Shown: positions 8,378 to 46,200, counted from the stretch's first letter. The stretch is DNA of 64,000 nucleotides from Macrostomum lignano (GCA_002269645.1 NIVC01000648.1:73829-137828); one strand, 5' to 3'. Notes: generated by a model not told the origin, from the sequence alone. Made by a program: numbers and translations.

Positions 8378-11038
8378 CTAGTTCCTGTTCTCCAGCCACT
8401 CCAGAACCTTCACCAGCAGATCCCTGGCGATGCCAGAAGCCTCCTGCACCAGCCTCTTGGCCAACTCGATAGCGGCCTGCTTGCCGTGCTCAGCCAGCTC
8501 CCTCAGGATGGCCTTGATCTGCTCCATGTCGATACCGATGATGTCCAGGATGTAGGCGTCGTCGTTGCGGTTCTCCAGCCACTCCAGAACCTTCACCAGC
8601 AGATCCCTGGCGATACCAGAAGCCTCCTGCAGCAGTCTCTTGGCCAGCTCGATAGCAGCCTGCTTGCCGTGCTCAGCCAGCTCCCTCAGGATGGCCTTGA
8701 TCTGCTCCATGTCGATACCGATGATGTCCAGGATGTAGGCGTCGTCGTTGCGGTTCTCCAGCCACTCCAGAACCTTCACCAGTAGATCCTTGGCGATGCC
8801 AGAAGCCTCCTGCAGCAGCCTCTTGGCCAGCTCGATAGCAGCCTGCTTGCCGTGCTCAGCCAGCTCCCTCAGGATGGCCTTGACCTCCTCGATGTTGATA
8901 CCGATGATGTCCAGGATGTAGGCGTCGTCGTTGCGGTTTTCCAGCCACTCGAGGACACGGATGAGGATGTCCTTCAAAGCTCCCTGGGCCTCCTGCAGCA
9001 GTCTTTTGGCCAGCTCGATAGCAGCCTGCTTGCCGTGCTCAGCCAGCTCCCTCAGGATAGCCTTGACCTGCTCGATGTCGATACCGATGATGTCCAGGAT
9101 ATAGGCGGACCTCTGACGCTCCAGGATCTCGAGCACCTTGATGAGGATGTCCTTCAGGGCTCCTTGAGCGTGCTCCAGCATCCTCTTGGCCAGCTCGATA
9201 GCGGCGTCCATACCGTTCTGAGCGAGCTCCCTCAGGATGGCCTTGACCTCTTCGATGTTGATGCCGATCAGATCAAGAATGAACGGGCTCTTGTGAACTC
9301 CGAGCTTTCCCTCGATCTCCAGAATAATGATCTTCTCCATAAGTCTCATGAGCATATCCTTCATAATTCCCTGAGCTCCATCCATGAGCTCTTGAACCAG
9401 TTTCTTCGCAGCCTCAGTACCCTCCTCTCTTAGAGTCTCCATAATGCGATCGATGATAGACTGCTCATCAAAAGCCTGAATAGATTCGTTGCGATTCTCG
9501 AGCCACTCCAGAACCTTCACCAGTAGATCTTTGACAATGCCAGAAGCCTCCTGGATCATCTTCTTGGCCAGCTCAATAGCGGCCTGCTTGCCGTGCTCAG
9601 CCAGCTCCCTCAGGATAGCCTTGACCTCCTCGATGTTAATACCGATGATGTCCAGGATGTAGGCGTCGTGGTTGCGGTTCTGCAGCCACTCGAGTACCCG
9701 AATGAGGATGTCCTTCAGAGCACCTTCGACGACCTCCTGCAGCAGCTTCTTGGCCAGCTCGATAGCGGCCTGCTTGCCGTGCTCAGCCAGCTCCCTCAGG
9801 ATGGCCTTGACCTGCTCGATGTCGATACCGATGATGTCCAGGATGTAGGCGGACCTCTGACGCTCCAGGATCTCGAGCACCTTGATGAGGATGTCCTTAA
9901 GAGCTCCTTGGGCTTCCTCCAGCATCCTCTTGGCCAGCTCGATAGCGGCCTGCTTGCCGTGCTGAGCGAGCTCCCTCAGGATGGCCTTGACCTCCTCCAC
10001 GTCGATGCCGATCAGGTCCAGGATGAAAGCGTCGTCGTTGCGGTTCTCCAGCCACTCCAGAACCTTCACCAGCAGATCCCTGGCGATGCCAGAAGCCTCC
10101 TGCAGCAGTCTCTTGGCCAGCTCGATAGCGGCCTGCTTGCCGTGCTCAGCCAGCTCCCTCAGGATGGCCTTGATCTGCTCCATGTCGATACCGATGATGT
10201 CCAGGATGTAGGCGTCGTCGTTGCGGTTCTCCAGCCACTCCAGAACCTTCACCAGCAGATCCTTGGCGATGCCAGATGCCTCCTGCAGCAGTCTCTTGGC
10301 CAACTCGATAGCGGCCTGCTTGCCGTGCTCAGCCAGCTCCCTCAGGATGGCCTTGATCTGCTCCATGTCGATACCGATGATGTCCAGGATATAGGCGGAC
10401 CTCTGACGCTCCAGAATTTCGAGGACCTTGATGAGGATGTCCTTCAGGGCTCCTTGAGCGTGCTCCAACATCCTCTTGGCCAGCTCGATAGCGGCGTCCA
10501 TACCGTTCTGAGCGAGCTCCCTCAGGATGGCCTTGACCTCCTCGACGTCAATGCCGATCAGGTCGAGAATGAATGCGTCGTCATTGCGGTTCTCCAGCCA
10601 CTCGAGGACACGGATGAGGATGTCCTTCAGAGCTCCCTGGGCCTCCTGCAGCAGCTCTTGGCCAGCTCGATAGCGGCCTGCTTGCCGTGCTCAGCCAGCT
10701 CCCTCAGGATGGCCTTGACCTGCTCGATGTCGATACCGATGATGTCCAGATGTAGGCGGACCTCTGACGCTCCAGGATCTCGAGCACCTTGATGAGGATG
10801 TCCTTCAGAGCTCCCTGAGCGTGCTGCAACATCTTTTTGGCCAGCTCGATAGCGGCCTGCTTTCCGTTCTGAGCGAGCTCCCTCAGGATGGCCTTGACCT
10901 CCTCCACGTCGATGCCGATCAGGTCCAGGATGAAAGCGTCGTCGTTGCGGTTCTCCAGCCACTCCAGAACCTTCACCAGTAGATCCTTGCAATGCCAGAA
11001 GCCTCCTGCACCAGCCTCTTGCCAGCTCGATAGCGGCC
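8378..11038 (-). CDS. Tandem helical-repeat polyprotein, copy A (5' end lost in N-gap; at least 15 units of ~60/61 aa)
   Basis: 707-aa ORF 8378-10501 continues upstream through single-base deletions (~10655, ~10749, ~10990, ~11020) to the gap. Units of 180/183 bp; ends ENRN-TAG at 8378. Confidence 0.85.
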
Positions 11039-11484
11039 NNNNNNNNNNNNNNNNNNNNNNNNNNNNNNNNNNNNNNNNNNNNNNNNNNNNNNNNNNNNNN
11101 NNNNNNNNNNNNNNNNNNNNNNNNNNNNNNNNNNNNNNNNNNNNNNNNNNNNNNNNNNNNNNNNNNNNNNNNNNNNNNNNNNNNNNNNNNNNNNNNNNNN
11201 NNNNNNNNNNNNNNNNNNNNNNNNNNNNNNNNNNNNNNNNNNNNNNNNNNNNNNNNNNNNNNNNNNNNNNNNNNNNNNNNNNNNNNNNNNNNNNNNNNNN
11301 NNNNNNNNNNNNNNNNNNNNNNNNNNNNNNNNNNNNNNNNNNNNNNNNNNNNNNNNNNNNNNNNNNNNNNNNNNNNNNNNNNNNNNNNNNNNNNNNNNNN
11401 NNNNNNNNNNNNNNNNNNNNNNNNNNNNNNNNNNNNNNNNNNNNNNNNNNNNNNNNNNNNNNNNNNNNNNNNNNNNNNNNNNNN
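11039..11484. other. Assembly gap (446 N)
   Basis: Run of N; the indels in the flanking repeat sequence are consistent with a low-quality contig end. Confidence 1.
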
Positions 11485-22308: not shown

Positions 22309-24582
22309 CTAGCTGCTGTTCTCCAGCCACTCCAGAACCTTCACCAGCAGATCCCTGGCAATGCCAGAAGCCTCCTGCACCAGCCTCTTGGCCAGCTCGA
22401 TAGCAGCCTGCTTGCCGTGCTCAGCCAGCTCCCTCAGGATAGCCTTGACCTGCTCCATGTCGATACCGATGATGTCCAGGATGTAGGCATTGCGGTTCTC
22501 CAGCCACTGAAGGACCTTGATGAGGACGTCCCTCAGTTCTCCTTCGGCATCCTGCAGGAGCTTTTTAGTCAGCCTGATGGCGGCCTCCTTTCCGGCGTTA
22601 GCCAGCTCCCTCAGGATAGCCTTGACCTCATCAATGTCAATATCGATGTTGTCCAGGATGTAGGCGTCGTCGTTGCGGTTCTCCAGCCACTCGAGGACAC
22701 GGATGAGGATGTCCTTCAGAGCTCCCTGGGCCTCCTGCAGCAGTCTCTTGGCCAGCTCGATAGCGGCCTGCTTGCCGTGCTCAGCCAGCTCCCTCAGGAT
22801 GGCCTTGACCTGCTCGATGTCGATACCGATGATGTCCAGGATGTAGGCGGACCTCTGACGCTCAAGGATCTCGAGCACCTTGATGAGGATGTCCTTAAGA
22901 GCTCCTTGGGCTTCCTCCAGCATCCTCTTGGCCAGCTCGATAGCGGCCTGCTTGCCGTGCTGAGCGAGCTCCCTCAGGATAGCCTTGACCTCCTCCACGT
23001 CGATGCCGATCAGGTCCAGGATGAAAGCGTCGTCGTTGCGGTTCTCCAGCCACTCCAGAACCTTCACCAGTAGATCCCTGGCGATACCAGAAGCCTCCTG
23101 CAGCAGTCTCTTGGCCAGCTCGATAGCGGCCTGCTTGCCGTGCTCAGCCAGCTCCCTCAGGATAGCCTTGACCTGCTCGAGGTCGATACCGATGATGTCC
23201 AGGATGTAGGCGTCGTCGTTGCGGTTCTCCAGCCACTCCAGAACCTTCACCAGCAGATCCTTGGCGATGCCAGAAGCTTCCTGCAGCAGTCTCTTGGCCA
23301 GCTCGATAGCGGCCTGCTTGCCGTGCTCAGCCAGCTCTCTCAGGATAGCCTTGACCTGCTCCATGTCGATGCCAATGATGTCCAGGATGTAGGCGGACCT
23401 CTGACGCTCCAGGATCTCGAGCACCTTGATGAGGATGTCCTTCAGAGCTCCTTGAGCGTGCTCCAACATCCTCTTGGCCAGCTCGATAGCGGCGTCCATA
23501 CCGTTCTGAGCGAGCTCCCTCAGGATGGCCTTGACCTCCTCGACGTCAATGCCGATCAGGTCGAGAATGAACGCGTCGTCATTGCGGTTCTCCAGCCACT
23601 CGAGGACACGGATGAGGATGTCCTTCAGAGCTCCCTGGGCCTCCTGCAGCAGTCTCTTGGCCAGCTCGATAGCGGCCTGCTTGCCGTGCTCAGCCAGCTC
23701 CCTCAGGATAGCCTTGACCTGCTCGATGTCGATACCGATGATGTCCAGGATATAGGCAGACCTCTGACGCTCCAGGATCTCGAGCACCTTGATGAGGATG
23801 TCCTTAAGAGCTCCTTGGGCTTCCTCCAGCATCCTCTTGGCCAGCTCGATAGCGGCCTGCTTGCCGTGCTGAGCGAGCTCCCTCAGGATAGCCTTGACCT
23901 CCTCCACGTCGATGCCGATCAGGTCCAGGATGAAAGCGTCGTCGTTGCGGTTCTCCAGCCACTCCAGAACCTTCACCAGTAGATCCTTGGCAATGCCAGA
24001 AGCCTCCTGCACCAGCCTCTTGGCCAGCTCGATAGCGGCCTGCTTGCCGTGCTCAGCCAGCTCCCTCAGGATAGCCTTGATCTGCTCCATGTCGATACCG
24101 ATGATGTCCAGGATGTAGGCGTCGTCGTTGCGGTTCTCCAGCCACTCCAGAACCTTTACCAGCAGATCCTTGGCGATGCCAGAAGCCTCCTGCACCAGCC
24201 TCTTGGCCAGCTCGATAGCGGCCTGCTTGCCGTGCTCAGCCAGCTCCCTCAGGATGGCCTTGACCTGCTCCATGTCGATACCGATGATGTCCAGGATGTA
24301 GGCGGACTTCTGACGCTCCAGAATTTCGAGGACCTTGATGAGGATGTCCTTCAGGGCTCCTTGAGCGTGTTCCAACATCCTCTTGGCCAGCTCGATAGCG
24401 GCGTCCATACCGTTCTGAGCGAGCTCCCTCAGGATAGCCTTGACCTCCTCCACGTCGATGCCGATCAGATCCAGGATGAAGGCGTCATCCTGCAGTTCAC
24501 CCTTCGCTACCTCCTGCAGAGGAGCGGCCTGGGCAAAGGCGAATGCCAAAGAGGCGAGTCCTAGTAGAATCCAAAGCTTCAT
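22309..24582 (-). CDS. Secreted tandem helical-repeat polyprotein, copy B (single exon; signal peptide, short pro-segment, 12 units of ~60/61 aa)
   Basis: Uninterrupted ORF. The likely start ATG at 24582 gives MKLWILLGLASLAFAFAQA (signal peptide), then APLQEVAKGELQDD and 12 repeats, ending ENSS-TAG at 22309. Confidence 0.93.
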   Translation of the reverse strand: MKLWILLGLASLAFAFAQAAPLQEVAKGELQDDAFILDLIGIDVEEVKAILRELAQNGMDAAIELAKRMLEHAQGALKDILIKVLEILERQKSAYILDIIGIDMEQVKAILRELAEHGKQAAIELAKRLVQEASGIAKDLLVKVLEWLENRNDDAYILDIIGIDMEQIKAILRELAEHGKQAAIELAKRLVQEASGIAKDLLVKVLEWLENRNDDAFILDLIGIDVEEVKAILRELAQHGKQAAIELAKRMLEEAQGALKDILIKVLEILERQRSAYILDIIGIDIEQVKAILRELAEHGKQAAIELAKRLLQEAQGALKDILIRVLEWLENRNDDAFILDLIGIDVEEVKAILRELAQNGMDAAIELAKRMLEHAQGALKDILIKVLEILERQRSAYILDIIGIDMEQVKAILRELAEHGKQAAIELAKRLLQEASGIAKDLLVKVLEWLENRNDDAYILDIIGIDLEQVKAILRELAEHGKQAAIELAKRLLQEASGIARDLLVKVLEWLENRNDDAFILDLIGIDVEEVKAILRELAQHGKQAAIELAKRMLEEAQGALKDILIKVLEILERQRSAYILDIIGIDIEQVKAILRELAEHGKQAAIELAKRLLQEAQGALKDILIRVLEWLENRNDDAYILDNIDIDIDEVKAILRELANAGKEAAIRLTKKLLQDAEGELRDVLIKVLQWLENRNAYILDIIGIDMEQVKAILRELAEHGKQAAIELAKRLVQEASGIARDLLVKVLEWLENSS

Positions 24583-25379
24583 GTTTGAAGTTTTCAAGTC
24601 GAGTGATGAGTCGTTTACGAAATTTGGTCCGTATATATGCATTTTCAAGTTGCTTTGCTAGTGATTTCTGACTTGTTTCGGCTGACGTTTTCTCAACGTT
24701 ATCAGTTCACCGCTTTGTTTGCTGTCTTTCAAACGTGCGTATCATTGAGAGAAATATTTCACCGATTTTTCCTTCTGGACCATTTTTAACCTTTCCTTTG
24801 GAATAATTCCAAAGTGGCCTAATGTTGCAGAAATTCCTGCACCCTGTTGATAGGAAATTGAAATTGAGTTTGCTTTTTCTGAAAAAATTCTTCGGTGGCG
24901 TGACTTGATAGCGTCACGCGTTGACGCATGCGATCCTGAAACTTACCGCCTCAGGGCAAATCTTCTATGGTTTCTATTTTTAACTTTTTAACACGTGCTC
25001 TACAGGTTTAGAGTTAGAATTTACGTTGAAGATTGAGATGCGCATTAGTTTCATTCATGAATGATGATGGATCTCAAGGCTCGTTTACGCTGCCATCAAA
25101 AGACAACATTTTTTGTTATCACAAGTCTTGTATACGCGTAAAGTTTGCGTAGCTGTGTACTATTAATTTTTTATTTGAAGGCTGTGAACAAGCCTTGAAT
25201 TCTGAACGGACTGGGCAGTATTTTTTTGAGTAATTTCATCGCATCGCAGTCATAGTCGAAAAACTTCTTTACCCAATTCTGCCAAGGTTGTTCGGATCAG
25301 CTAGAAAGTATATGGCGCCCATATTGATGGCTTGCTATGCGGCTGGGGAAGGAAAGATTCGGTGGGTCTGGTCTATTTT

Positions 25380-25893: not shown

Positions 25894-28800
25894 ATGTCGG
25901 ACCACAGTTCAGCTTCGTCGGACTTTTCGGAGACTCATCCTTCCACCACAACCATCAGCACCGTTGCTGTGCAGGCTGGTCCTGCCAGAATTGTGCTGGC
26001 TGTATTGCGGGTAGGTCTTTCCCACTGAAACATGCTTAGTTCTTTGCCCAGGAATCAACTGTGATTGTCGTGTATTAGCCTGTATAACGAATTGGATACA
26101 TAGGAGTTACACAGTTTCTACTAGAAAGACACCCAGGCTTATTGACAAGTCTGTCTTGCCGGCATTCTTATCAGGGTGCGCTTGTAGCTTCACACACTGG
26201 CTAGGGGGGGGGGGGGACCTAGCGACACATGCGAGGGATTCGCGTTTGAAAAGGGGAGCTCAAAATAGAGTAGAATACCGGCTTGTACGAGCATTGGCAT
26301 GGTTGTATGCGCATTTGAAAACTTCGAGAACAGATAACCAAATCGATGAAATTTGCAATGCATTTTATTTTAGTGCGGAGAATGGATCAGAGTTCGTATT
26401 CAGCAAATGGACCCGGACCTGTACGACATCGGCGCCAGTTTAGAGGAGGCCATGGAGATGCAGAGAGTTCACGAACAGCTGCGCTACAAACTGCAGGTAG
26501 TTAAAGTGTTCGATTATTTAAACAATTTTGCGAGTATTAGGACTCAGAACCAAGACTGCACAGACTACCTAGAAAATTTTTCACAAATTTTAGGCAAAGC
26601 AGTCGCAAATCTCAGAGCTTCTGGCCCGAGCAGACGATCTCGTGGCTCAACAGCGCACTCGCACGGAAGTTTACGAAGCCATGGCCCAGTCGCTGGGTAA
26701 AGCCTGGCAAGATCTTCAAAGCATCATGGAGCGACGCAGCGACTTGCTAGCCCATGCCGTGTTATTCTTCACGCACGTCAGCCAGTATTCGAATCAATTC
26801 GACCTAATCACCGATCTATGTCGACACTTCGACGCACCGCACGACGGACAGACAGTGGAGCGTCTGCTCCATGAGCATCACGAAATGAAGCAGAAGCTGT
26901 TGGAGCAGTCCAAAGTTACACTGGAAGTTGGACACCAGCTGCTAGATCATTTGAGGAGGCTGAGCTGTGCCACCCAGTCTGAGCAGCGGCAATCTGTTCT
27001 GACGGCCTGTAATCGCGTGGAGCGAATTCTCGAGAGCCTGACAGAGCGACGGCGTGGCCTTGACGAGCTGTGGCGCGGTCGAAAGCACCGGCTAGAAGAG
27101 GCCACCAGGCTGACTTCTCTCGACGATGAACTTCAGCGGCTGCTGAGATCGCTTGCCAGAGGCGATTACCTGGTCTCAAATTGCGAGATCGGTCGGAGCC
27201 TTCAGGAGTCTGAGATGCTGATGAAAGAAGTTCTGGCGTTCGGCAACGAGGCGGGCGATGTTCAAGACGCTCTGCTCCGATTGTGCCGTTCCGCAACGTC
27301 TCTCATGGAGCCGGGAGGCTTTGCGGACACGGACTCAATCAGACGGAGGCTTGAGAAGGCCGACCGCGTAGCAGAAGAGTTCATCCAGCGTTTGGAGACG
27401 CGAAGGCGACTGCTAAATATGGCCGTAATTTTCTACAGCGAAGTTGAAGTGCTATTTCAGCGAGCCCGTCGACTTGACATTGCGCCAAATGAGTCACTTC
27501 ACGAGGTTGAAGCCAGGCTGCCTGGGCTTCGCACTACCGGACAGGCATTGCTGGCCAAGCTTGAGCCGGACAGTCACTCTGCGCATGCGGTCAGGTCGAA
27601 GCTGAAGGAAGCTGAAGACTTCCTAGACAAGTGCTACCAGCTCGTGCGCCGTCATGAACAAGAAGATGAGAAGCGGACTTGCACTAGTCGGCTGGAGATT
27701 CTGAACACTTGGATGGTTGAGATTGTCTTCCGTCGGCTGCGCGAGGGCAACGATCCAGGAACTACGGTGGCCTCAGTGCAGAACTTCATCGATGCGCACC
27801 AGCATCTGCTAGAGGAGCTATCAAGACGCGAGGGCGAATTTCATCAGGTTGAAATTCTAATTGAACGCTACACGATAAGCGCGCATTCCTTCGGCGCCTG
27901 CAGGAGCTGCGCCAGAAACTGGGCCATGCTAAGACCATCTGCCACTTCCGCCTGGACGTTGGTCATCGCTTGCTGGCCCTACTCAGACAAGCGCAGCAGG
28001 ACGAGCTCAGTATCCAGGTGTTCCTGAGTGGCCTTGACGAGGCCAGAACCCGGGCTGACCTGCTGACAGACTACTGGTTTACGGACTCTGCGAGACAGCA
28101 GAATATGCTTGTTAGCCAGCTGTACGATCAGCAAGCGAGCATCAGGGAGATTCTAAAGAAGGTATGACTGATTTGCGTAGATTTTTATCCAATAATCCAA
28201 TGATCAAGACTGTTCATTATAGAATTTATATGATTTTCCCGTCAGATTTCTGCCAGTCGCACGGCTGAAGACGACGACTTCTCGGCTGGGCCGCTCAGCC
28301 GCTACCTGGAGTCGCAGCTGGCGCGCATCGATGCTCATCTATCGGCCCTGCACGAGCAGTGGAACTCGGCGCAGCGCCTACGCGAAGAGGTCGGCATCTA
28401 CAAGCAGCAGCTGCGCGAGTTCAACAGCGACGCCCGACGAGCCGAGGATATGATGCGCGACGCTGAGGCTAAGTTTACGTCTACTGTGCACTTTCGGTGA
28501 GCACATTTTTTGTTGCTGACATAAGTTTCTAACCCTACAAGGGAGAGACTTCTAGATACTTAAAGACTCGAGTTGAAATACATCGGGGATCAAAGCTCAT
28601 TTGAAGCTTTAAGAACCGTTGCATTCCATGCTCCATGCTCATTACATTTATTGAATAGTTCAAGCCCCAAAACGGGCCTGTCAAAAAAGGCCTTCTGCTA
28701 CTGTTTATTTGTATGCTATTAACTTTATCAATAATGTTATTGCACCTCATATTAGTATTATGAAAATTTTGCTAGCTGCTTATCTCTGCAACAATTCTCA

Positions 28801-31228
28801 AGAAATATCTTTCCACCCTCCAATGCAGTGACTTTCTCGACTTCGACCAGTTTCTAGCCGAGCACAATCGCTCTCGCGACGTAGTCAATCAATTCGTCAA
28901 TTTGACCCTGACCAAGGGTCGCGACCTGCTGCACATGCTGTCAACACGAAGCGAAGACAGCGGCGCAGCCAAGGAGACTCGCAGCGCTCTCAGCTCGCTT
29001 CAGGCGGCCAAAGAGCAATGGGATCGCGTGTGGCAGACGTCTCTAAGTCGAGCGCAGGATCAGCTGAGGTCCACGGAAGCGTTGGGGCAAATAGAAGTGA
29101 GTGCAGAAATGTGAACAACTGATGCTTCACTAAATATGCATTGATTTTAGTGCAATAATAATTTGTTTCGAAAGTCTCTGCTGAGCATCGACACACCAGA
29201 ATGAATAAAACCGTAGGCACAGAAGGATTGCTGCGTATCAGAGGGCTTCACATTGATGGGAGTTTTGCCTTTAGAATTCTTGGCACGGCTCCAGTTGCGT
29301 AAACAGACAGTCAGATTTTCTTCTGCGTCAAACTGTTCCTAATCTTTTTTCTAGCTATTTCTGGCGCCAGTGACTGGTTGCTGCTGGTAAAGATGGCGCA
29401 AACCACCGCACAAATTTGGACTCTCCCGTGACTGCATCGGGACATACGTATATTCAGCGGTTCAGCATTTTCCTCTCCCCGCACCTAGACAGGCAGCCCT
29501 CCATCACAATCGTTAGTCACGCCGAGGCAGGCAGCAGCAGGGCATCCTTCCCCCCCCTCTGCTAGAAGCCCTGCTGTCGGACTTCGATCGATAACCTCGA
29601 ACCTTTGCTAAGCTGAACATCGCGGCATAGGCATTTTCCTAGTTCAAGGGATAGGGGCAGATAAGGCGATCGGGCTAGCAGGGGAGTGTAGTTCCGCATC
29701 TCCCAGTTTCCAGAAAATTCCATTCCACCAGCGCAAGGAATTTTCCTTGTACAAGCCAGTGCAAGCGAACCGACGCTATATTCGTCGAAGGCGGTTTTTT
29801 GCGTTTTAGTCAAAACAGAACTTAGCTGGAAGCGAATCGATGTAGACGGAGAGGAAGGAACAAATGGTGGCTCGGACCTTTCCACTGCTTCAAGCGATGG
29901 ATCCATTAATAATCCTTCCGGGGGGCCGCTTGGGCCGGTCGATGCAGCTACACGAAGCGAGATATGCGCAAAAAAGCTGGCGTAATTTTCAATGCCATCC
30001 TATAGCAGATGTTTCGCTGAAATGCGGCATAGTCACGTTTTGTTCTATAAAGGTGCGATAGTCCAATGAAGCGGAAGCTGCAGTTCGGCTGACTAAAAGC
30101 TGCGAAAGAGTGGGGGGTACACAGGCACACAAGGGCTGGACACTGACTAAATTCTATTGGGACTACTGGTACGCGCTGGACGGGTCCGAGTTTAAATAGC
30201 ATAGTAGACACCGCCGAAAAAGAGAAATAGTATGGAATGGATGAATGACAATGGGCGGCGGAGGCGAGCACAATTAAGTGAGTTGTGCAGATAATTATTA
30301 ACTCAGGACTGTGCTTGGCTGGTCAGTAGCGCACATTCTCTCTAGCTCATTCTCTTTCCATCTCTTTCCTCTGTTCTTCGAGTCTTCTTTAGTCAAAGTG
30401 TTTCAATGGACTAACATGTACAGTAAAGTGGCCATGCCTGAGCTGACCTGAGCACCTGCTCATGTGGTACTCATCGTACGAGTACTCAGCGTAGACAAGC
30501 AGTTATTTCGGCTTTTTAGAAAGCCGTAAGAATTTTTTTATAAAAAACGTCAAGTCAACATGCAATCGTCATCGGGGCCCAATTTTCAGTACGTTGAGCG
30601 AGAAGTCGATCAGGCAGTGCTGGAGCTTCGCCGAGCCCGCGACGCCATGCAGACGGAGCCATCGGAGAAAACACGAGACAGCCTGCAACTGCTAGAGAAC
30701 CGAGTACCGGTACGGTTGCTGATCTACGCCTAGAGTTATGTAGAACAGAACAGAACAGAACAGAACAGAACAGAACAGAACAGAACAGAACAGAACAGAA
30801 CAGAACAGAACAGAACAGAACAGAACAGAACAGAACAGAACAGAACAGAACAGAACAGAACAGAACAGAACAGAACAGAACAGAACAGAACAGAACAGAA
30901 CAGAACAGAACAGAACAGAACAGAACAGAACAGAACAGAACAGAACAGAACAGAACAGAACAGAGCAGAACAGAGCAGAACAGAACAGAACAGAACAGAG
31001 CAGAACAGAACAGAACAGAACAGAACAGAACAGAACAGAACAGAGCAGAGCAGAACAGAACAGAGCAGAACAGAACACAACCGACCAGATCATGGTTCAA
31101 TGGTCTCAATTCCATGGTGTCATTGAATTTCTAATAAATTTTCGGACTTTTAGCAAAACTAACGAAAATTGTGAATTCAGTATCTAAAAGATCAAGTCCG
31201 AGCATCCACTGAGCGTTCGGAGAGCCAG
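25894..31228 (+). CDS. CCDC141/zormin-like helical (spectrin-repeat) exons: 25894-26010, 26374-26496, 26594-28161, 28246-28496, 28829-29096, 30590-30709, start of exon at 31181
   Basis: STTTISTVAVQAGPARIVLAVLR|CGEWIRV...DIGASLEE and VYEAMAQSLGKAWQDLQSIMERRSDLL resemble the recalled N-terminus of vertebrate CCDC141. Canonical GT-AG with matching phases; one frameshift at ~27870. Confidence 0.85.
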
Positions 31229-40200: not shown

Positions 40201-43200
40201 AGGATGTGAACTTAAGCGCAATTTGGAAGCCGTGAGTCCAGCAACCCAACCGCTGCGAAATTCTCACTATTCAGACCCAAAATAGACAAGAAAAGCGTAG
40301 TTGATCTTTCTTCCACCCCGGCCGCTTCCGCATAGGACAAATGGGGAAAATGGGGATTTCATGTGAACTTAAGGCTCTGAAATGGAAGCGGTGGCCGATT
40401 GAGCCGGTTTCTCTATCGGATCTCTCTACTGGACCGACAATGAGAGAAGAATCGTCGAAAACCGCATCTCTCTATCATTTGGGCTCCCTGAATGGGATAA
40501 ATGGGGAAAAATGGGGATTTCATGTGAACTTCCATTCAGGGAGACCAAATGATAGAGAGATGCGGTTTTCGACGATTCTTCTCTCATTGTCGGTCCAGTA
40601 GAGAGATCCGATAGAGAAACCGGCTCAATCGGCCACCGCTTCCATTTCAGAGCCTTAAGTTCACATGAAATCCCGATTTTTCCCCATTTGTCCTATGCGG
40701 AAGCGGCCGGGGTGGAAGAAAGATCAACTACGCTTTTCTTGTCTATTTTGGGTCTGAATAGTGAGAATTTCGCAGCGGTTGGGTTGCTGGACTCACGGCT
40801 TCCAAATTGCGCTTAAGTTCACATCCTCTTTATTTGTCCATCTATACTCATACATTTGCCACATAATAAGCAGGTCAATACTAAGCCAAAAATTGGTCAG
40901 TGCAGAAAGCTACATTCGCCCCCGGGTATTAGGGGATTCCCCGGGGATTCGTTACCACCCAAAAAGGCAGATACTCTTCAACAGCCCTAAAAAGCAGTTT
41001 TACCAAAGAATGAGCAGTGGAAGAGGAAAATATTGTTTAGGGCTCAGTTTACTGCGGCCTTTTTGCTGCCACACCCAGTCGGCGCTTGTCTTTTCCTCGT
41101 CTCGGCACTGCACTGTCTCTGCGATATCGAGACACGAAGAGAGAGAGAGAGAGAGAGAGAGAGCCCTCAGCATCTCAATCTGCATCGCTCTGGCCAAGAT
41201 ATTGGGCGTGGTCTAAGCGCCAGTGAGAGAGAGAGAGAGGTCAGGGTGGCATCTCTCTGCGATTGAGTCATTTATCCTACCTATCAGTCTCTGATTTTCT
41301 GCCTCTTATGTTCTACCTGTCCACCTTCTTACTCTCCACCTCTCCACCTGTCCATCAATTTTTACTTTCCACTTGTCCATCAATTCTTACTCTCTACCTG
41401 TCCATCAGTTCTTACTCTCTACCTGTCCATCAATTCTTACTCTCTACCTGTCCATCAGTTCTTACTCTCTACCTGTCCATCTTCTTACTCTCTACCTGTC
41501 CATCTTCTTACTCTCTACCTGTCCATCTTCTTACTCTCTACCTGTCCATCTTCTTACTCTCTACCTGTCCATCTTCTTACTCTCTACCTGTCCATCTTCT
41601 TACTCTCCACCTGTCCATCAATTCTTACTCTCTACCTGTCCATCTTCTTTCTCTCTACCTGTCCATCTTCTTACTCTCTACCTGTCCATCTTCTTACTCT
41701 CTACCTGTCCATCTTCTTACTCTCTACCTGTCCATCTTCTTACTCTCTACCTGTCCATCTTCTTACTCTCCACCTGTCCATCAATTCTTTCTCTCTACCT
41801 GTCCATCTTCTTACTCTCTACCTGTCCATCTTCTTACTCTCTACCTGTCCATCTTCTTACTCTCTACCTGTCCATCTTCTTACTCTCTACCTGTCCAACT
41901 TCTCACTCTCTACCCGTCCGTCTTCTTTGTCCCTTTTTATGATTAACTTCCAACTTGTTGACATGCCCTAAATTTCTTCCCAGCTAAGCTGCAACATCCT
42001 CAAAGTCTATATTCCCAGTTCCAATTTCTGCTTTGTTTATCACCTCCACAGCTGTCCAGGCATTCTGGTCTTATTTCTTGAATATCCCACGCAGTCCAAC
42101 TACGTCCTGTTTTAGCAATTAGCTATCCGTCTGGACTGCTTTACCTGCTGTTAGGCCCTCTCCCTTATCCCTTATCCTTCCATGGAAATTCTCGTGGGGA
42201 TTTTACTCGCGCCAGCTATTACGAGACGTTGGGAGTTAAATTTGACAGAATTGACAGTTTAGCAACATCACCATGCTCTTGTTTCTTATAAAATATTTAT
42301 GCTTTTTGGAATACTGTAAGCTAAGATGAGCCCTCAGATTCGTTCTATAAGATTCTTTGTACCATATAATAGATACACATAACTTTTTTTAACAGTCAGC
42401 AAAAGTAACAGCATTGAGATGCAATACCCCACTGCAGTTAAGGAGGCATAACTTTTGATAAGTTCGTGGTATTTAGAAAATTCTTTCACTGTGTCATTTT
42501 TAAGTAAAGCCGCTATGAAATAAATTGGCGGCTGTTACTCTTTCTGACTATTAAAAAGTCCCCTCGAGGGACACCCCTCGTATTTTGACAAGAAAGCAGA
42601 CATTGCATTGATTATACGATTTCCAATTTATTTGTGTAAATAAAGTTGTTAGAATACTCGTACAAGTACCAGATGAATACCGCACAAAAACGCACAATAT
42701 GTACCGCCAGACTACATCCGGGTAAGCCCTGTTCTGTGACACGCAGGGGTGCTAAAGAATCTGTTCTCCCAATACGGTGCAGTTGTGGTCATTTTTTGGT
42801 AATGTCGGCCGCTGAACCTGGGGACCGGTGTTCAATCAAGCGACCGACGCATTGACGCCTTCATCATCAGCAGCCTCCGGCGACGCCGCGGCAATCCCAG
42901 CGATGGTGTTTCTAGTGGCATCTTTCCTGACTCCGGCCTGCTGTCTGGGATCTGCTGCTGCTGTCCAGAGGGCGTCGTGCCTGCCTCCGGCCAGGTGCAG
43001 CCTCTGGCAGGCCCGGTAGGCCAGGCTGCAGGCGGGGTAGCAGCACAGGCAGGGCACAAACAAGGCCAGCAGGCAAACGCAGCTCCAGGCCTTCAGCCGG
43101 TCCAGCAGACTCGACCGGGCGTCACCGTCGTTTTCGTCGTCTTCTTCGTCGTAGTCGTCGGCTTCGTTGCCGTTGACTCCCGCGTCGGCGGCGTGACCGA

Positions 43201-46200
43201 CTTTGCCGTGGTTGTCATCCTCGCCGCAGCTGTTGGCCTCCGAGTCGCCTTGCCGGGCCGACCTGCCGCGACCAACCAGCAACTGGCAGGGGTTGATGTA
43301 GTCACCCTCGCTGTCCGCGCAGCAGTGGTAGGACACCCCGTCGGCCAGCGTCAGGCAGGTCAGGCGCTCGATGCAGACCCTGAGCCGGTCGGGCGCCTCC
43401 GGACAGGCACCTTTCAGGTTGCGCCGATCGTCGTAGAGGCGCAGGCAGTAGCGACACACCTGCTGGTGAATGCGGCCAGCTCGGCTGGAGGAGCCTGCGG
43501 CGGCGGCAGCGGTGCTTGCTGACGCGCCGTTGCGCAGAGCGTCCTGGCGAACCAGCGGCACGGTGTTTCGACGCATCGAAATCCTGTTGGAGTCGCTGCG
43601 CACGAGATTGCTGCTGTTGCTGCTTGGCTGCTCCTCCGGGTGCTGCTGCTGCTGTTGCTGGCCCAGAAGGTGCGGATCAATGTCTGCCGAGGTCAGCGAG
43701 GTCACAGACGTCAAAGCCGCCATTGCAGCCGCTTCCGGAGCAGTTGCCATTATTGCTACTAGAAGGAGAAGCGTGGAATTGGGGTGTTGATCGGTTCTAC
43801 AAAGAGGCAATAAATTTGTTGGCATTGCTTATGAAGCTTCTGGTGGTGTTGAAAAAGCTTCCAAATCCCCTTAGCTCAATTCCATACTTTTACCGTAATC
43901 TCAGCACCCCTCGTCCCAAGTTTTCATCCGCAAATAACCGCAGCAGCTGAAGTCCTCTCGATAAGTCCTCTCGCGCCTTTACTTCAAAGTAACCTACCTA
44001 CATGTATAGTTAGTCGCAAAGAGACCCACAAGCCGGAATATGAAAATTGAATAGTCCCAGTGGCCCCATAGCCCCCTTCCCGTTCACCTCTTTCACCTTT
44101 CTTGCTAGCTTTCTACGTGCCTCGCAACTGTTTCGCATAGCTTAGCTACTAGGCCTCTTTTGGAACTCGCTTATCTTGCCATTGCTTATCCCAAGTAGCT
44201 GGGCGAAGGAATTCCCTCTTTCACCTAACTGCTGGGACTTTGACAGGTGCTGTTTATCGCTCACTCACCTGCTCACTCTCCCTGTCACTCGTTGCAAAAA
44301 AGACAACTTATAGTGCGCTTATTTCTACTTTAGTCCCCGACCCAGAGCCGCGAACCCAACTCTGAACCAGTCCGACGACTGACGCTTTCCCGAACTAGTA
44401 GTACTTTTCACTGGGGCATGAGCTAAGCTAGACAAGTTTTCTTCCATGGCCCGAACAAAGTTCAATTGAAAACTGCTTACACGTGTACAAAATCGGAATT
44501 GGCTGTAGCTATTGATTTGATTCTTCTGTGTGCCTTTCTCCCGATTGTGTTTGCACAGTTCAGCTTTCTTCTTCTTCTGTTCCTGTTTCTTCCGTTGCTG
44601 GTGGGATGATGCAACTGCTAGGGTTAACTTGCGCGATTCTGCTTCCCAGCACATCGTCCGTCTTTTAATTCCTCTCGGCAAGCACTCCCCCCCCTCCTAC
44701 TGGCACCCATTATTTTTCAGTCCCGCCTGCAACCCTCGCAGTTTCTTCATTAACGAGTTCTCTTCTCTGGTTGGCTTAGGCTCCTTTAGCAACGTAGATG
44801 GCCGGGGAGAGAGAGAGAGAAAGGGAGCGGGGAGGGCAAAACAGATGGGGCGAGGTCCGCCCGCCCTCTTCCCTATCAGGGCTCGGTGTACGCAGGCTGA
44901 TGAGGAGGCGGAGCCTGTCCAGCTTCATCAAGCTGGGATGTATCGCCACCAACGCATTGTTCGACTGCTCATGCAATAGATACGACTCCTAGTTATAGAT
45001 TTTTCAAACTTACATTACGAGACTAAGCCCAAATAACCTGGTTTCGATTACGATACCGGCTACGTTAATTAATGACCGATTTGCACTGCAAACATTGTGA
45101 ACTCATGACTGGTCCTCTGTACCTGAGGACGGTGCCTGCGCAGTTGTTGCTTAATTTCTTCAGAGGAGCGATCGGCAAACTTTCTTACCTCAAGGGCCAG
45201 ACAAAGAATCCAGCGCAAGGCTGAGGGCCAGAAGAGAGAGGAAAGAATGGGGAAAAGAAAATGAGAGATTAGAGAAAAGAGGAGAAGTGAGGGATGGGAT
45301 GGGATGAGAGAAAAGATAGAAGATATGAGGAAGAGAGGTGAGAGAAGAGAGAAGAGAGGAGAGAGGAGAGGGAGAAAGGGTGGATGAGAAAGGAGTGAGG
45401 ATAGGGAAGAAGAGGAGAGAGGAGAGAGGAGAGAGGAGAGAGGAGAGAGGAGAGAGGAGAGAGAGAGAGAGAGAGAGAGAGGAGAAAGGAGAGAGGAGAG
45501 AGGAGAAAGGAGAGAGGAGAGAGGAGAGAGGAGAGAGGAGAGAGGAGAGAGGAGAAAGGAGAGAGGAGAAAGGAGAGAGGAGAGAGGAGAGAGGAGAGAG
45601 GAGAGAGGAGAGAGGAGAGAGGAGAGAGGAGAGAGGAGAGAGGAGAAAGGAGAGACGAGAGAGGAGAGAGGAGTGAAGGGAGAAGAGAACGGAGAGAGAG
45701 AGAGCTAAGAAGAGACACAAACCTTGAGGCGGGCCGGATTGCTATTGCGAAGTTCCAAAGGACCCGAGGGCCGGATAGAGAGGCTTCGCTGGTCGCATTT
45801 TGCCCTCGGGCCGGAGTTTGCCGATCCCCGTGGTCTTGGTGTTTCTAATAACACATAGTTCGTAACAACTAAAGAAAAGTATATTTTCCTCAGTTACGAC
45901 ACATTTAGAACAGGTATCTTAGATTAGAGCCGGTAGCTATGCCATCTCCCGGATTTTTTAAATCGCGTTGACACGAAAACCGTCATTCACACGGCATCAA
46001 AACTGTTAATTGCAGCATTCAGACGGTCCGCCGCGGAGGAGCTTCTCCCGGAGGCCGAGCCGCGCGACGGTGCCGGTAGGGCGCCAATTTTCAGTCGGCT
46101 GCTTCAGCCAGTTCGGGTGCACGAGCTGCAGCCGGTCAGGTGAGTGGGCAGCTGCCATCTGGTTTTGCCTTCTGCTGTGTATGCTGCTATTGATTTTTAT

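What the first reader, a model, noticed from the sequence alone, without database searches (positions are those of the whole stretch)
22309..24582. Secreted, cysteine-free polyprotein of 12 amphipathic four-helix units with built-in processing boundaries
Seen: a signal peptide, a 14-aa pro-segment ending LQDD, then 12 units of about 60/61 aa such as AYILDIIGIDMEQIKAILRELAEHGKQAAIELAKRLLQEASGIAKDLLVKVLEWLENRNDD. The repeats contain no Cys or Pro. Each unit reads as a short hydrophobic N-terminal segment plus three amphipathic helices broken at Gly. The pro-segment ends in the same DD as most linkers and the stop falls exactly at a unit end, so the units look like discrete modules. A typical unit is slightly anionic (12 D/E vs 8 K/R), unlike classic cationic antimicrobial peptides. 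I do not recognise the family. Inference: a precursor cut into ~6.5-kDa lipid- or membrane-binding modules, analogous in design to saposin-like/naegleriapore polyproteins, nematode polyprotein allergens or four-helix bacteriocins. Possible roles are mucus surfactant, pore former, lipid carrier or gland secretion.
Basis: partly seen in the sequence, partly recalled or inferred. Interest (0 to 1): 0.88.

Follow-up and report, generated by a model that had tools for sequence, protein, structure and literature searches.

The report
Secreted helical tandem-repeat protein, flatworm orphan
This is a real, transcribed gene of the flatworm Macrostomum lignano for a secreted protein made of twelve ~60-residue helical units from a family with no known relatives, but nothing in the sequence shows that it is cut into separate peptides.

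Summary
On the minus strand, 22309..24582 encodes 757 aa: a signal peptide, 14 further residues, then 12 units of 59-61 aa with no Cys or Pro. The window is Macrostomum lignano. The protein is 99.3% identical to an NCBI "hypothetical protein", and a second tandem copy lies at 8.4-11 kb.

Units are under purifying selection: some pairs have identical peptides with dS of about 0.38.

No Pfam, PDB-sequence or Foldseek match is significant. An HMM search of 1.84 billion proteins found only fragments from a few unidentified eukaryotic contigs. AlphaFold gives each unit three confident helices plus a low-confidence, strongly conserved hydrophobic N-segment (AYILDIIGID). It gives no fixed packing between units.

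The "built-in processing boundaries" are not supported:
- There is no basic or furin-type site at any junction.
- The linker is the least conserved part of the unit.
- One homolog ends mid-unit, and homolog introns split the units.

My best reading, which is inferred, is an abundant secreted string of amphipathic three-helix modules that binds lipid or other hydrophobic ligands. It probably acts intact. Cleavage into roughly 6.8-kDa peptides remains possible, at about 0.2.

This is an uncharacterised lineage-specific family of moderate interest.

The parts
22309..24582 (-). Complete single-exon CDS, 757 codons plus TAG stop at 22309-22311
   Evidence: ORF listing and translation. It is 99.3% identical to NCBI PAA53508.1, BOX15_Mlig003541g1 of Macrostomum lignano. 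GC3 is 0.815 against 0.44-0.74 in neighbouring ORFs.
24526..24582 (-). Signal peptide MKLWILLGLASLAFAFAQA (aa 1-19); predicted cut after A-Q-A
   Evidence: Read directly from the sequence: K in the n-region, a 14-residue hydrophobic core, A at -3 and -1. It is conserved in paralogs as MKLLILLGLASLAFAFAQA. A homolog has an analogous signal, MRFWAFLILAVVASAAA. No signal-peptide predictor was available.
24484..24525 (-). 14-aa N-terminal segment APLQEVAKGELQDD that precedes the first unit
   Evidence: It ends in DD like the B-type linkers. The homolog P0010 has LPVEDASQTEVEVTSD before AYIID. It could be a propeptide or a degenerate remnant of a helix 3 plus linker. This is not resolved.
22312..24483 (-). 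Array of 12 tandem units (724 aa). Unit order is A B B A B' A B B A B' B'' B, where A is AFILD...ILERQ[KR]S and B is AYILD...WLENRNDD.
   Evidence: Unit coordinates are 24304-24483, 24121-24303, 23938-24120, 23758-23937, 23575-23757, 23395-23574, 23212-23394, 23029-23211, 22849-23028, 22666-22848, 22489-22665 and 22312-22488. Units 4/9 and 5/10 are nearly identical in DNA (dS 0.025-0.05), which points to a recent five-unit block duplication or gene conversion.
24121..24303 (-). Representative B unit (61 aa): hydrophobic N-segment AYILDIIGID, helix 1 (res 11-24), helix 2 (26-39), helix 3 (43-57), linker NRNDD
   Evidence: AlphaFold2 with the 18-unit alignment gave mean pLDDT 82.5 and pTM 0.67. 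The helices are at about 88-94, while residues 1-10 average about 52. Helices are amphipathic, with hydrophobic moments of 0.46-0.58.
24631..24639 (-). TATA-like element (catatatac), about 20-25 nt upstream of the 5' end of the annotated transcript (about 24612)
   Evidence: Sequence read. The 5' end of the NCBI model P0004 starts at the codon for D of DSSLDLKTSN-MKLW. This places the in-frame upstream ATG at 24640-24642 outside the mRNA, which is an inference.
8378..11038 (-). Second tandem copy of the same gene family (paralog of the Mlig000287g1/P0002 type with about 17 units), broken in this assembly
   Evidence: The intact ORF 8378-10501 encodes 707 aa of the same units. Further upstream the units continue only through at least 2 frameshifts and are then cut by the N gap 11039-11484. 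The full-length form is known from NCBI PAA48434.1, 1093 aa.

Best explanation
[quoted passage not shown] It encodes a soluble, secreted, acidic protein of about 83 kDa (mature pI 4.8).

Architecture: the protein is a string of twelve small domains. Each domain has a conserved hydrophobic decapeptide (A-[YF]-I-[LI]-D-x-I-G-I-D) followed by a three-helix bundle of amphipathic helices. Domains are joined by short, variable, polar or acidic linkers. The family is lineage-restricted and has no detectable relative among characterised families.

Proposed mechanism (inferred, not shown): the protein is made in large amounts and exported. It acts through its many amphipathic, unusually hydrophobic modules as a multivalent binder or carrier of lipid or other hydrophobic ligands, in the manner of exchangeable apolipoproteins or helminth lipid-binding proteins. 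The conserved hydrophobic N-segment would act as a lid, or as a contact with the neighbouring domain, over the wide hydrophobic face of helix 3. The protein most likely works intact or after only limited cleavage.

Step confidences:
- Real, expressed, secreted tandem-repeat protein of an orphan family: about 0.9.
- Three-helix module plus hydrophobic N-segment: about 0.7.
- Binding of lipid or hydrophobic ligands as the function: about 0.35.

The overall confidence given is that of the least certain step.
For: Gene and organism:
- The protein is 99.3% identical to an M. lignano gene model, and the paralog models carry 5' UTR sequence.
- Coding constraint is strong. dS is 0.3-0.9 against dN of 0-0.3 between units, and some peptide-identical units have dS = 0.38.

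Expression:
- Codon bias is extreme. GC3 is 0.815, CTG accounts for 92 of 125 Leu codons and AAG for 56 of 57 Lys codons, while neighbouring ORFs have GC3 of 0.44-0.74. This fits high expression.
- In Brand et al. 2020 (PMC7336406, Table S8), the two representatives of transcript cluster Mlig000287 have 42,213 and 62,943 reads in whole worms. Typical transcripts in that table have tens to hundreds of reads. Paralog P0002 is Mlig000287.g1.
- Those representatives are classed non-specific in position, but are about 3.7-fold lower in the head fragment than in trunk-containing fragments.

Secretion:
- There is a signal peptide and no other hydrophobic segment.
- There is no KDEL-type C-terminus, no Cys, and a single N-glycosylation sequon.

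Fold:
- AlphaFold predicts three helices at pLDDT of about 90 in a single unit.
- The four-unit model has pTM 0.31 with junctions below pLDDT 50, so no rigid packing between units is predicted.

Amphipathic character:
- Helix hydrophobic moments are 0.46-0.58.
- K/R residues lie mostly nearer the polar/non-polar interface (about 95-150 degrees from the hydrophobic moment). D/E residues lie mostly at the centre of the polar face (about 150-180 degrees), with exceptions in most helices. This resembles the class-A apolipoprotein helix pattern.
- About 51% of residues are hydrophobic, and GRAVY is +0.05 for the mature protein.

Orphan status: there are no significant Pfam, PDB-sequence or Foldseek matches. 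Only 3 true hits were found among 1.84 billion representative proteins.
Against: - There is no direct evidence of lipid or ligand binding, and no homology to any lipid-binding family.
- The link between Mlig000287.g21/.g66 and this gene family rests on a shared cluster prefix and compatible CDS lengths, not on sequence I could inspect.
- Tissue of expression is unknown.
- The protein is more hydrophobic than typical exchangeable apolipoproteins. Its helices are short (14-15 residues), which favours stable small bundles over lipid-surface helices.
- The low confidence of the multi-unit AlphaFold model may reflect the shallow, self-derived alignment rather than real flexibility.
- The conserved hydrophobic N-segment is unexplained. 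It could instead drive self-assembly.
Confidence: 0.35

Rival explanations
1. Polyprotein precursor. After secretion or in the secretory pathway, the chain is cut at every junction just before the invariant A-[YF]-I-[LI]-D. This releases twelve anionic helical peptides of about 6.8 kDa, which act singly or as oligomers in lipid binding or as membrane-active or surfactant peptides.
For: - The array starts exactly at a unit start after a 14-aa leader that also ends in DD, and it ends within 2 residues of a unit end.
- A homolog likewise has a signal peptide, a leader ending in D, then AYIID.
- The residue before A-Y is nearly always D, E, N or S, and B-type linkers (NRNDD) are rich in Asn and Asp. 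These are the P1 residues of legumain-type asparaginyl endopeptidases (established knowledge; not tested here).
- A single unit is predicted to fold on its own, and no packing between units is predicted.
- Unit number varies between paralogs, 12 against 17.
Against: - No dibasic or R-x-x-R site lies at any junction.
- Four junctions (RQ[KR]S) have no Asn or Asp at all.
- Linkers are the least conserved positions in the unit. Known polyproteins conserve their cleavage sites.
- The homolog in L001 ends in a 23-residue truncated unit.
- Homolog introns fall inside units, between helix 2 and helix 3.
- Regular boundaries are expected of any tandem-domain protein.
- No proteomic data were found.
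Confidence: 0.2
2. Intact multivalent scaffold or matrix protein whose ligand is not lipid. The twelve three-helix modules would act as repeated binding or self-association sites, like the tandem 58-aa three-helix domains of staphylococcal protein A. The twelve hydrophobic, beta-prone AYILDIIGID segments would drive assembly into a gel, granule matrix or coating, for example of secretory granules, the gut lumen or food particles.
For: - AlphaFold behaviour fits beads on a string.
- The hydrophobic N-segment is the most conserved stretch across units and homologs, with D5 invariant, yet it is not confidently placed within a single unit.
- Expression appears high and copy number variable.
Against: - The sequence lacks features typical of structural secretions. 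There are no Cys for cross-links, no Ser/Thr/Pro-rich mucin regions, no Gly/Tyr/Lys-rich adhesive or eggshell motifs, and only one glycosylation sequon.
- No ligand can be named.
- Foldseek did not retrieve protein A-type domains above noise.
Confidence: 0.22
3. Continuous alpha-solenoid. The units would not be independent domains but would stack into one superhelical helical-repeat protein of the HEAT/Sel1/designed-repeat type.
For: - The only sequence matches in the PDB are to designed helical repeat proteins (5cwm, E = 1.5e-6, but with bias 29 of 30 bits) and to alphaRep HEAT-like proteins (E = 0.02).
- There is a weak Pfam hit to a Sel1-like repeat.
Against: - Those matches are driven by composition and fall below every curated threshold.
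- AlphaFold did not build a stacked solenoid. The four-unit model has pLDDT 53 and pTM 0.31 with coil at the junctions.
- hhalign finds no relation between half-units, so the unit is not two 30-residue hairpins.
Confidence: 0.08
4. Antimicrobial or pore-forming effector: amphipathic helical modules that permeabilise membranes of bacteria or of diatom prey.
For: The helices are amphipathic, the protein is secreted, and it is probably abundant.
Against: - The protein has a net negative charge (pI 4.8). Most helical antimicrobial peptides are cationic.
- The helices are only 14-15 residues long, too short to span a bilayer.
- It is not a member of the saposin-like or other pore-former families.
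Confidence: 0.07
5. Not a functional gene: a satellite-like repeat with an accidental ORF, or a pseudogene.
For: Long antisense ORFs also run through the array. The neighbouring copy is frameshifted in this assembly.
Against: - dS greatly exceeds dN between units.
- The reading frame is intact, with a signal peptide and a stop.
- Codon bias is strong.
- Paralogs have transcript-based gene models.
- Homologs with spliced exons occur in other organisms.
Confidence: 0.02

Closest known systems
Exchangeable apolipoproteins (apoA-I/A-IV/E, insect apolipophorin III)
   Same: They are secreted, abundant, acidic and largely Cys-free, and are built from tandem amphipathic helices. The charge layout is partly similar, with Lys/Arg mostly nearer the interface and Asp/Glu mostly at the centre of the polar face.
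   Different: There is no sequence or Pfam relationship. The period here is 60-61 aa with Gly breaks, not 11/22-mers punctuated by Pro. The helices are short (14-15 residues) and predicted to form closed three-helix bundles. The protein is more hydrophobic (GRAVY +0.05).
Nematode polyprotein allergens/antigens (NPA, e.g. Ascaris ABA-1)
   Same: Both are secreted helminth proteins made of many tandem helical units behind one signal peptide. The NPAs bind lipid.
   Different: NPA units are about 133 aa and are released at conserved tetrabasic sites. Here units are 60 aa, there is no R-x-x-R anywhere, there is no Pfam NPA match, and cleavage is unproven.
Cestode hydrophobic-ligand-binding proteins (Echinococcus antigen B, Taenia 8-kDa antigens; Pfam Taeniidae_ag)
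   Same: Both are flatworm-specific, secreted, alpha-helical units of about 7-8 kDa. The cestode proteins oligomerise and carry lipid.
   Different: Each cestode subunit comes from its own small gene rather than a 12-unit chain. No match to the Pfam family appeared even at E <= 10. Any relation is by analogy only.
Saposin-like proteins, including amoebapore/naegleriapore multi-peptide precursors
   Same: Both are small helical membrane- or lipid-active modules. Naegleriapores are released from multi-copy precursors.
   Different: The saposin fold is defined by six Cys in three disulfides. This protein has no Cys at all and no SapB match.
Tandem three-helix-bundle arrays such as staphylococcal protein A (five domains of about 58 aa)
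   Same: Both are a string of small three-helix bundles of about 58-61 aa joined by short linkers. Protein A functions uncleaved, through multivalency.
   Different: Protein A is a bacterial surface protein that binds immunoglobulin. There is no sequence or significant Foldseek similarity. Here an extra conserved hydrophobic decapeptide precedes each bundle.
De novo designed helical repeat proteins (PDB 5cwm and relatives)
   Same: These are the best PDB sequence hits. They share an idealised composition rich in Glu, Lys, Ala, Leu and Ile, and regular helix-loop periodicity.
   Different: The match is compositional (bias about equal to score). These are artificial proteins with no evolutionary relation, and AlphaFold does not predict a stacked solenoid here.

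Membership tests
Saposin-like proteins (SAPLIP; amoebapore/naegleriapore) | Six conserved cysteines forming three disulfide bonds in a domain of about 80 aa | tested here: not met
   There are zero Cys in the 724 repeat residues.
Saposin-like proteins (SAPLIP; amoebapore/naegleriapore) | Match to Pfam SapB_1/SapB_2 or to the saposin fold | tested here: not met
   No such Pfam hit appeared at E <= 10 for single units. No saposin fold appears among the Foldseek matches, and all matches have E > 1.
Nematode polyprotein allergen/antigen (NPA) | Tandem units of about 133 aa separated by conserved tetrabasic (R-x-K/R-R) cleavage sites | tested here: not met
   Units are 59-61 aa. The protein has no R-x-x-R. 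The only dibasic pair in each unit lies inside helix 2.
Nematode polyprotein allergen/antigen (NPA) | Sequence membership (Pfam NPA family) | tested here: not met
   There is no hit.
Exchangeable apolipoproteins (Pfam Apolipoprotein, ApoLp-III) | 11/22-residue amphipathic repeats, often punctuated by Pro; Pfam match | tested here: not met
   The period is 183 nt or 61 aa. There is no Pro and no Pfam match.
Exchangeable apolipoproteins (Pfam Apolipoprotein, ApoLp-III) | Class-A amphipathic helices (basic residues at the interface, acidic residues at the centre of the polar face) | tested here: inconclusive
   Helical-wheel angles are about 95-150 degrees for K/R and mostly 150-180 degrees for D/E. 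The helices are only 14-15 residues long and no statistical control was run.
Exchangeable apolipoproteins (Pfam Apolipoprotein, ApoLp-III) | Reversible binding to lipid surfaces | not testable with these tools
   This needs recombinant protein and lipid-binding assays.
Cestode hydrophobic-ligand-binding proteins (antigen B / Taeniidae_ag) | Sequence membership (Pfam PF05596); single subunits of about 8 kDa encoded by small separate genes | tested here: not met
   There is no Pfam hit at E <= 10. Here 12 units lie in one ORF. No profile-profile comparison with real family members was made.
Convertase-processed secretory polyproteins in general | A conserved protease recognition motif at every unit junction | tested here: not met
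   Junctions vary (NRNDD, RQRS, RQKS, NRN; in homologs NQNQGN, GSDE, AQDE, KSED, AGD) and are the least conserved columns. None is basic.
Convertase-processed secretory polyproteins in general | Detection of the released unit peptides | not testable with these tools
   No M. lignano proteomic data containing these peptides were found.
Alpha-solenoid repeat proteins (HEAT-like, Sel1-like, designed DHR) | Helical hairpin repeats of 30-45 residues that stack into one continuous superhelix | tested here: not met
   hhalign finds no similarity between half-units. The four-unit AlphaFold model is not stacked and has pTM 0.31. The Pfam Sel1-like hit scores 15-16 bits against a cut-off of 27. PDB hits are compositional.
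Tandem three-helix-bundle domain arrays (protein A type) | Independently folding three-helix bundles of about 58 aa joined by short linkers | tested here: inconclusive
   The single-unit model has three helices with pLDDT 82.5. The multi-unit model is of low confidence. Foldseek matches to three-helix bundles such as MIT domains all have E > 1.

The most novel reading that the evidence does not exclude
The protein is a true polyprotein processed by a non-convertase protease that recognises the junction before the invariant A-[YF]-I-[LI]-D, for example a legumain-type enzyme cutting after Asn or Asp. Processing would release a new class of anionic, cysteine-free three-helix peptides of about 6.8 kDa. 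These would carry lipid or act on membranes in a free-living flatworm, as an independent counterpart of the roughly 8-kDa lipid-binding antigens of tapeworms and the polyprotein allergens of nematodes.
Probability: 0.15. Interest if true: 0.7.

Novelty: new variant of a known kind. Interest (0 to 1): 0.4.

Why it matters
Flatworms depend heavily on proteins that bind and move lipids. The small helical lipid-binding proteins of parasitic flatworms, such as antigen B, are major antigens and diagnostic targets. An abundant secreted helical repeat protein from a free-living, genetically tractable flatworm, with RNAi and transgenesis available, would be an accessible system for studying such proteins and how they arise.

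The unit is also a very small, idealised, Cys-free helical domain with no known relatives, which is of some interest for protein-fold cataloguing and design.

If the protein turns out to be one more lineage-specific secretory product with no special role, the finding is ordinary. Orphan secreted repeat proteins are common in invertebrate genomes.

Tried and rejected
- Pfam on the whole protein gave 43 apparent hits (GDH_HM3, WSLR, Ribosomal_L10 and others). These are sums of weak matches over 12 repeats. On single units nothing exceeds 16 bits and no family recurs. I rejected them.
- PDB sequence searches returned only designed helical repeats and alphaRep proteins. These matches are compositional.
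- Foldseek of the single-unit model against the PDB gave no match with E < 1. It returned only generic three-helix bundles such as MIT domains.
- I tested the idea that the 60-aa unit is two 30-aa HEAT-like hairpins. hhalign of helix 1 plus helix 2 against helix 3 plus linker plus N-segment found nothing.
- I looked for orthology between the A/B unit types of M. lignano and the two unit types in the homolog exon. Both homolog types are closer to B, so the A/B split is not shared.
- I considered the KR pair in each unit as a prohormone-convertase site. It lies in the middle of helix 2 and is not conserved in homologs.
- A scan of JGI metagenome contigs with the unit profile gave no confirmed relative.
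- The organism behind the homologous contigs (NCBI GCA_041443025.1 and ENA assemblies ERZ27264312, ERZ23499066 and ERZ27248209) could not be identified.
- Literature searches found no paper text naming Mlig003541, Mlig015561 or Mlig000287. The supplements of three further M. lignano papers also lacked them. Only Brand et al. 2020 lists Mlig000287.g21/.g66.
- No rhabdite, single-cell or proteomic source gave a tissue assignment.
- The four-unit AlphaFold model was too poor (pLDDT 53) to justify a fold search.
Full report
**Observation.** The feature is real and lies on the minus strand. The reading frame runs from ATG at 24582 to a TAG stop at 22311-22309 and encodes 757 residues.
- It starts with a typical secretory signal, MKLWILLGLASLAFAFAQA, followed by APLQEVAKGELQDD.
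- Twelve units of 59-61 residues follow, each beginning A[FY]ILD.
- The 724 repeat residues contain no Cys and no Pro, and only one Thr.
- Each unit has 10-12 acidic and 7-9 basic residues. The mature protein is about 83 kDa with pI 4.8.
- Tandem Repeats Finder reports a 183-nt period with 11.7 copies and score 2421, plus a 363-nt double period.
- There are two unit types. Type A is AFILD...ILERQ[KR]S (60 aa) and type B is AYILD...WLENRNDD (61 aa). The order is A B B A B' A B B A B' B'' B.
- Units 4/9 and 5/10 are almost identical in DNA, so a five-unit block was recently duplicated or converted.

The quoted example unit is actually the unit at 10214-10396 of a second gene copy. Only 6 of the 11 internal junctions end in DD. 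The last unit is two residues short.

**Is it a gene?** Yes.
- Between units, synonymous divergence (dS 0.3-0.9) far exceeds non-synonymous divergence. Units 1 and 6 encode identical peptides over 58 codons with dS = 0.38.
- Codon use is extremely biased. GC3 is 0.815 against 0.44-0.74 in neighbouring ORFs and 0.45 GC in the flanks. CTG accounts for 92 of 125 Leu codons, ATC for 85 of 94 Ile and AAG for 56 of 57 Lys.
- The long antisense ORFs are a by-product of this repeat and codon bias.
- The TTG start at 24648 that the ORF tool proposed comes from the bacterial code. A TATA-like element at 24631-24639 lies about 20-25 nt upstream of the 5' end of the NCBI transcript-based model. That leaves ATG 24582 as the first ATG in the mRNA. 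This last point is inference.

**Organism and paralogs.** A protein search returned one 90% cluster of four Macrostomum lignano "hypothetical proteins".
- PAA53508.1 (Mlig003541g1) is 99.3% identical to this ORF.
- PAA53513.1 (Mlig015561g1, 12 units) and PAA48434.1 (Mlig000287g1, 17 units including one divergent 66-aa unit) are about 94-95% identical paralogs.
- The window itself holds a second copy on the same strand. The ORF 8378-10501 continues upstream only through frameshifts and is then cut by the N gap 11039-11484.
- Unit number therefore varies between copies.

**Relatives elsewhere.** A profile of 18 distinct units was searched with HMMER against 1.84 billion representative proteins. 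It found four proteins with E <= 0.001. One is a fragment from M. lignano itself. Two are short fragments with 40-50% unit identity. One is a spurious repeat protein. A second word-indexed profile search added three more fragments.

These come from very short contigs of NCBI assembly GCA_041443025.1 and of ENA metagenome assemblies. I could not identify the organisms. A scan of JGI metagenome contigs found nothing.

The fragments are still informative:
- P0010 has its own signal peptide, a leader ending in D, and then AYIID.
- Contigs L002 and L004 show GT..AG phase-1 introns of about 87 nt after GAAK/GAFK, which is between helix 2 and helix 3. In L004 one exon encodes two units.
- The gene on L001 ends in a truncated unit, AYKIGMNMEKIREILQKLPILAK*.

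So the family is eukaryotic, spliced in other species, intronless in M. lignano, and very narrowly distributed in public data.

**Comparison with known families.**
- Pfam on the whole protein lists many "hits", but these are sums of weak matches over twelve repeats. On single units nothing exceeds 16 bits and no family recurs among eleven diverse units.
- PDB sequence searches return only de novo designed helical repeat proteins and alphaRep proteins, with bias about equal to score.
- AlphaFold2 on one unit, using the unit alignment, gives mean pLDDT 82.5 and pTM 0.67. It predicts three helices (residues 11-24, 26-39, 43-57) at about 88-94. The conserved hydrophobic N-segment AYILDIIGID averages about 52.
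- Foldseek against the PDB gives no match with E below 1, only generic three-helix bundles such as MIT domains.
- A four-unit model has pLDDT 53 and pTM 0.31, with all junctions and N-segments below 50. No rigid packing between units is predicted, though the alignment behind that model is shallow.
- I tested whether the unit is two 30-residue HEAT-like hairpins. hhalign finds no similarity between the halves.

**Processing boundaries.**
- No junction has a dibasic or R-x-x-R motif. The protein contains no R-x-x-R at all.
- The one dibasic pair in each unit (KR) lies inside helix 2 and is not conserved in homologs.
- Junction residues are the least conserved columns: NRNDD, RQRS, RQKS, NRN, NRNHD and NRNE, and in homologs NQNQGN, GSDE, AQDE, KSED and AGD. 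The following A-Y-I-[LI]-D is the most conserved stretch.
- A homolog ends mid-unit, and homolog exons are out of register with the units.
- The leader ending in DD could equally be a degenerate remnant of a helix 3 plus linker.
- What remains in favour of processing is that the residue before A-Y is nearly always D, E, N or S. The NRNDD linkers would suit an Asn/Asp-specific endopeptidase of the legumain type. However, four junctions have neither Asn nor Asp.

I put cleavage into single units at about 0.2.

**Expression.** No paper text names these genes. Brand et al. 2020 (PMC7336406) list two CD-HIT representatives of transcript cluster Mlig000287, the cluster to which paralog PAA48434.1 belongs.
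- Their CDS lengths are 3429 and 3807 nt.
- Read counts in fragments A to D (head only through whole worm) are 7,022 / 31,261 / 36,698 / 42,213 and 11,012 / 47,809 / 55,999 / 62,943. Most transcripts in the same table have tens to hundreds of reads.
- They are classed "Non-Specific", with a +1.9 log2 step from the head fragment to the head-plus-testis-region fragment and then a flat profile.
- One is modestly lower in worms kept in groups of eight than in isolated worms (log2FC -1.39, adjusted p = 0.043).

Cluster prefixes were assigned at 95% nucleotide identity of transcriptional units (PMC5730564). It is therefore likely, but not shown, that these are members of this family. If so, the family is among the most abundant transcripts and is expressed along the trunk rather than the head. 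That would fit gut or trunk gland cells. The extreme codon bias points the same way.

**Mechanism.** Shown or directly read from the sequence:
- a secretory signal, no other membrane segment, no retention signal, no Cys, and one glycosylation sequon;
- helices with hydrophobic moments of 0.46-0.58;
- basic residues mostly nearer the polar/non-polar interface and acidic residues mostly at the centre of the polar face, with exceptions;
- about 51% hydrophobic residues, with helix 3 having nine hydrophobic positions out of fifteen.

Inferred: each unit is a small three-helix bundle whose over-wide hydrophobic face is covered by the conserved N-segment of its own or the next unit. The protein is exported in quantity and acts as a multivalent binder or carrier of lipid or other hydrophobic ligands, most likely intact.

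I give about 0.9 to the gene and its secretion, about 0.7 to the module architecture, and about 0.35 to the lipid or hydrophobic-ligand function.

Rivals:
- true polyprotein, 0.2;
- intact scaffold or self-assembling matrix, 0.22;
- continuous alpha-solenoid, 0.08;
- antimicrobial or pore-forming effector, 0.07;
- non-functional repeat, 0.02.

**Known families.** In design the protein resembles exchangeable apolipoproteins, nematode polyprotein allergens, cestode 8-kDa lipid-binding antigens and the tandem three-helix domains of protein A. It is a member of none of them.
- It has no Cys, which excludes saposin-like proteins.
- It has no tetrabasic sites or 133-aa units, which excludes NPAs.
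- It has no 11/22-mers or Pro punctuation, which excludes apolipoproteins.
- It has no Pfam match to any of these families.

**Verdict.** The family is uncharacterised and lineage-restricted, although the sequence is already deposited as a hypothetical protein. The polyprotein and processing reading is an attractive but unsupported inference. I rate it a new variant of a known kind (secreted helical tandem-repeat protein) and of moderate interest.

Noticed in passing
window 8378-11484 (-): A second tandem copy of the repeat gene lies about 11 kb downstream on the same strand. The ORF is intact only for 8378-10501. Upstream units are reachable only through at least 2 frameshifts, and the 5' end is lost in the N gap 11039-11484. 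This is either an assembly error or a decaying copy.
   Followed up: partly
window 26642-61172 (+): Exons of a giant muscle-type gene. They include spectrin repeats (26642-28027), many immunoglobulin-like ORFs (31.2-38.7 kb and 48.9-55.7 kb), and a 1594-aa acidic PEVK-like ORF with units of about 45 aa (56388-61172). The gene looks titin-, obscurin- or UNC-89-like.
   Followed up: partly
window 42836-43825 (-): An ORF with a Sprouty domain (Pfam E = 1.6e-16) lies on the opposite strand, apparently nested in an intron of the giant gene.
   Followed up: partly
window 30555-31115, 41263-41946, 45190-47323: Long low-complexity Ser/Leu/Cys/Phe-coding simple repeats produce spurious ORFs on both strands. 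Strong GC and AT skew is seen at 40-48 kb.
   Followed up: no
L003 (ENA ERZ27309203 k141_404803), 221-496: This 506-bp metagenome contig (GC 58%) encodes a bacterial Rho N-terminal domain fused in frame to a Macrostomum-type unit (86% identity) ending LENRN*. It is most likely an assembly chimera. It also indicates that a close Macrostomum relative was present in that sample.
   Followed up: partly
L002 and L004 (ENA metagenome contigs): Homologous genes in an unidentified eukaryote have phase-1 introns of about 87 nt between helix 2 and helix 3. One exon encodes two units. The M. lignano genes have no introns across 12-17 units, which suggests intron loss or a retro-copy origin followed by expansion.
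   Followed up: partly
window 22417-24564 (+): Four to six long antisense ORFs (171-280 aa) run through the repeat array. They are explained by the GC3-rich, stop-poor repeat and are not evidence of a second gene.
   Followed up: yes
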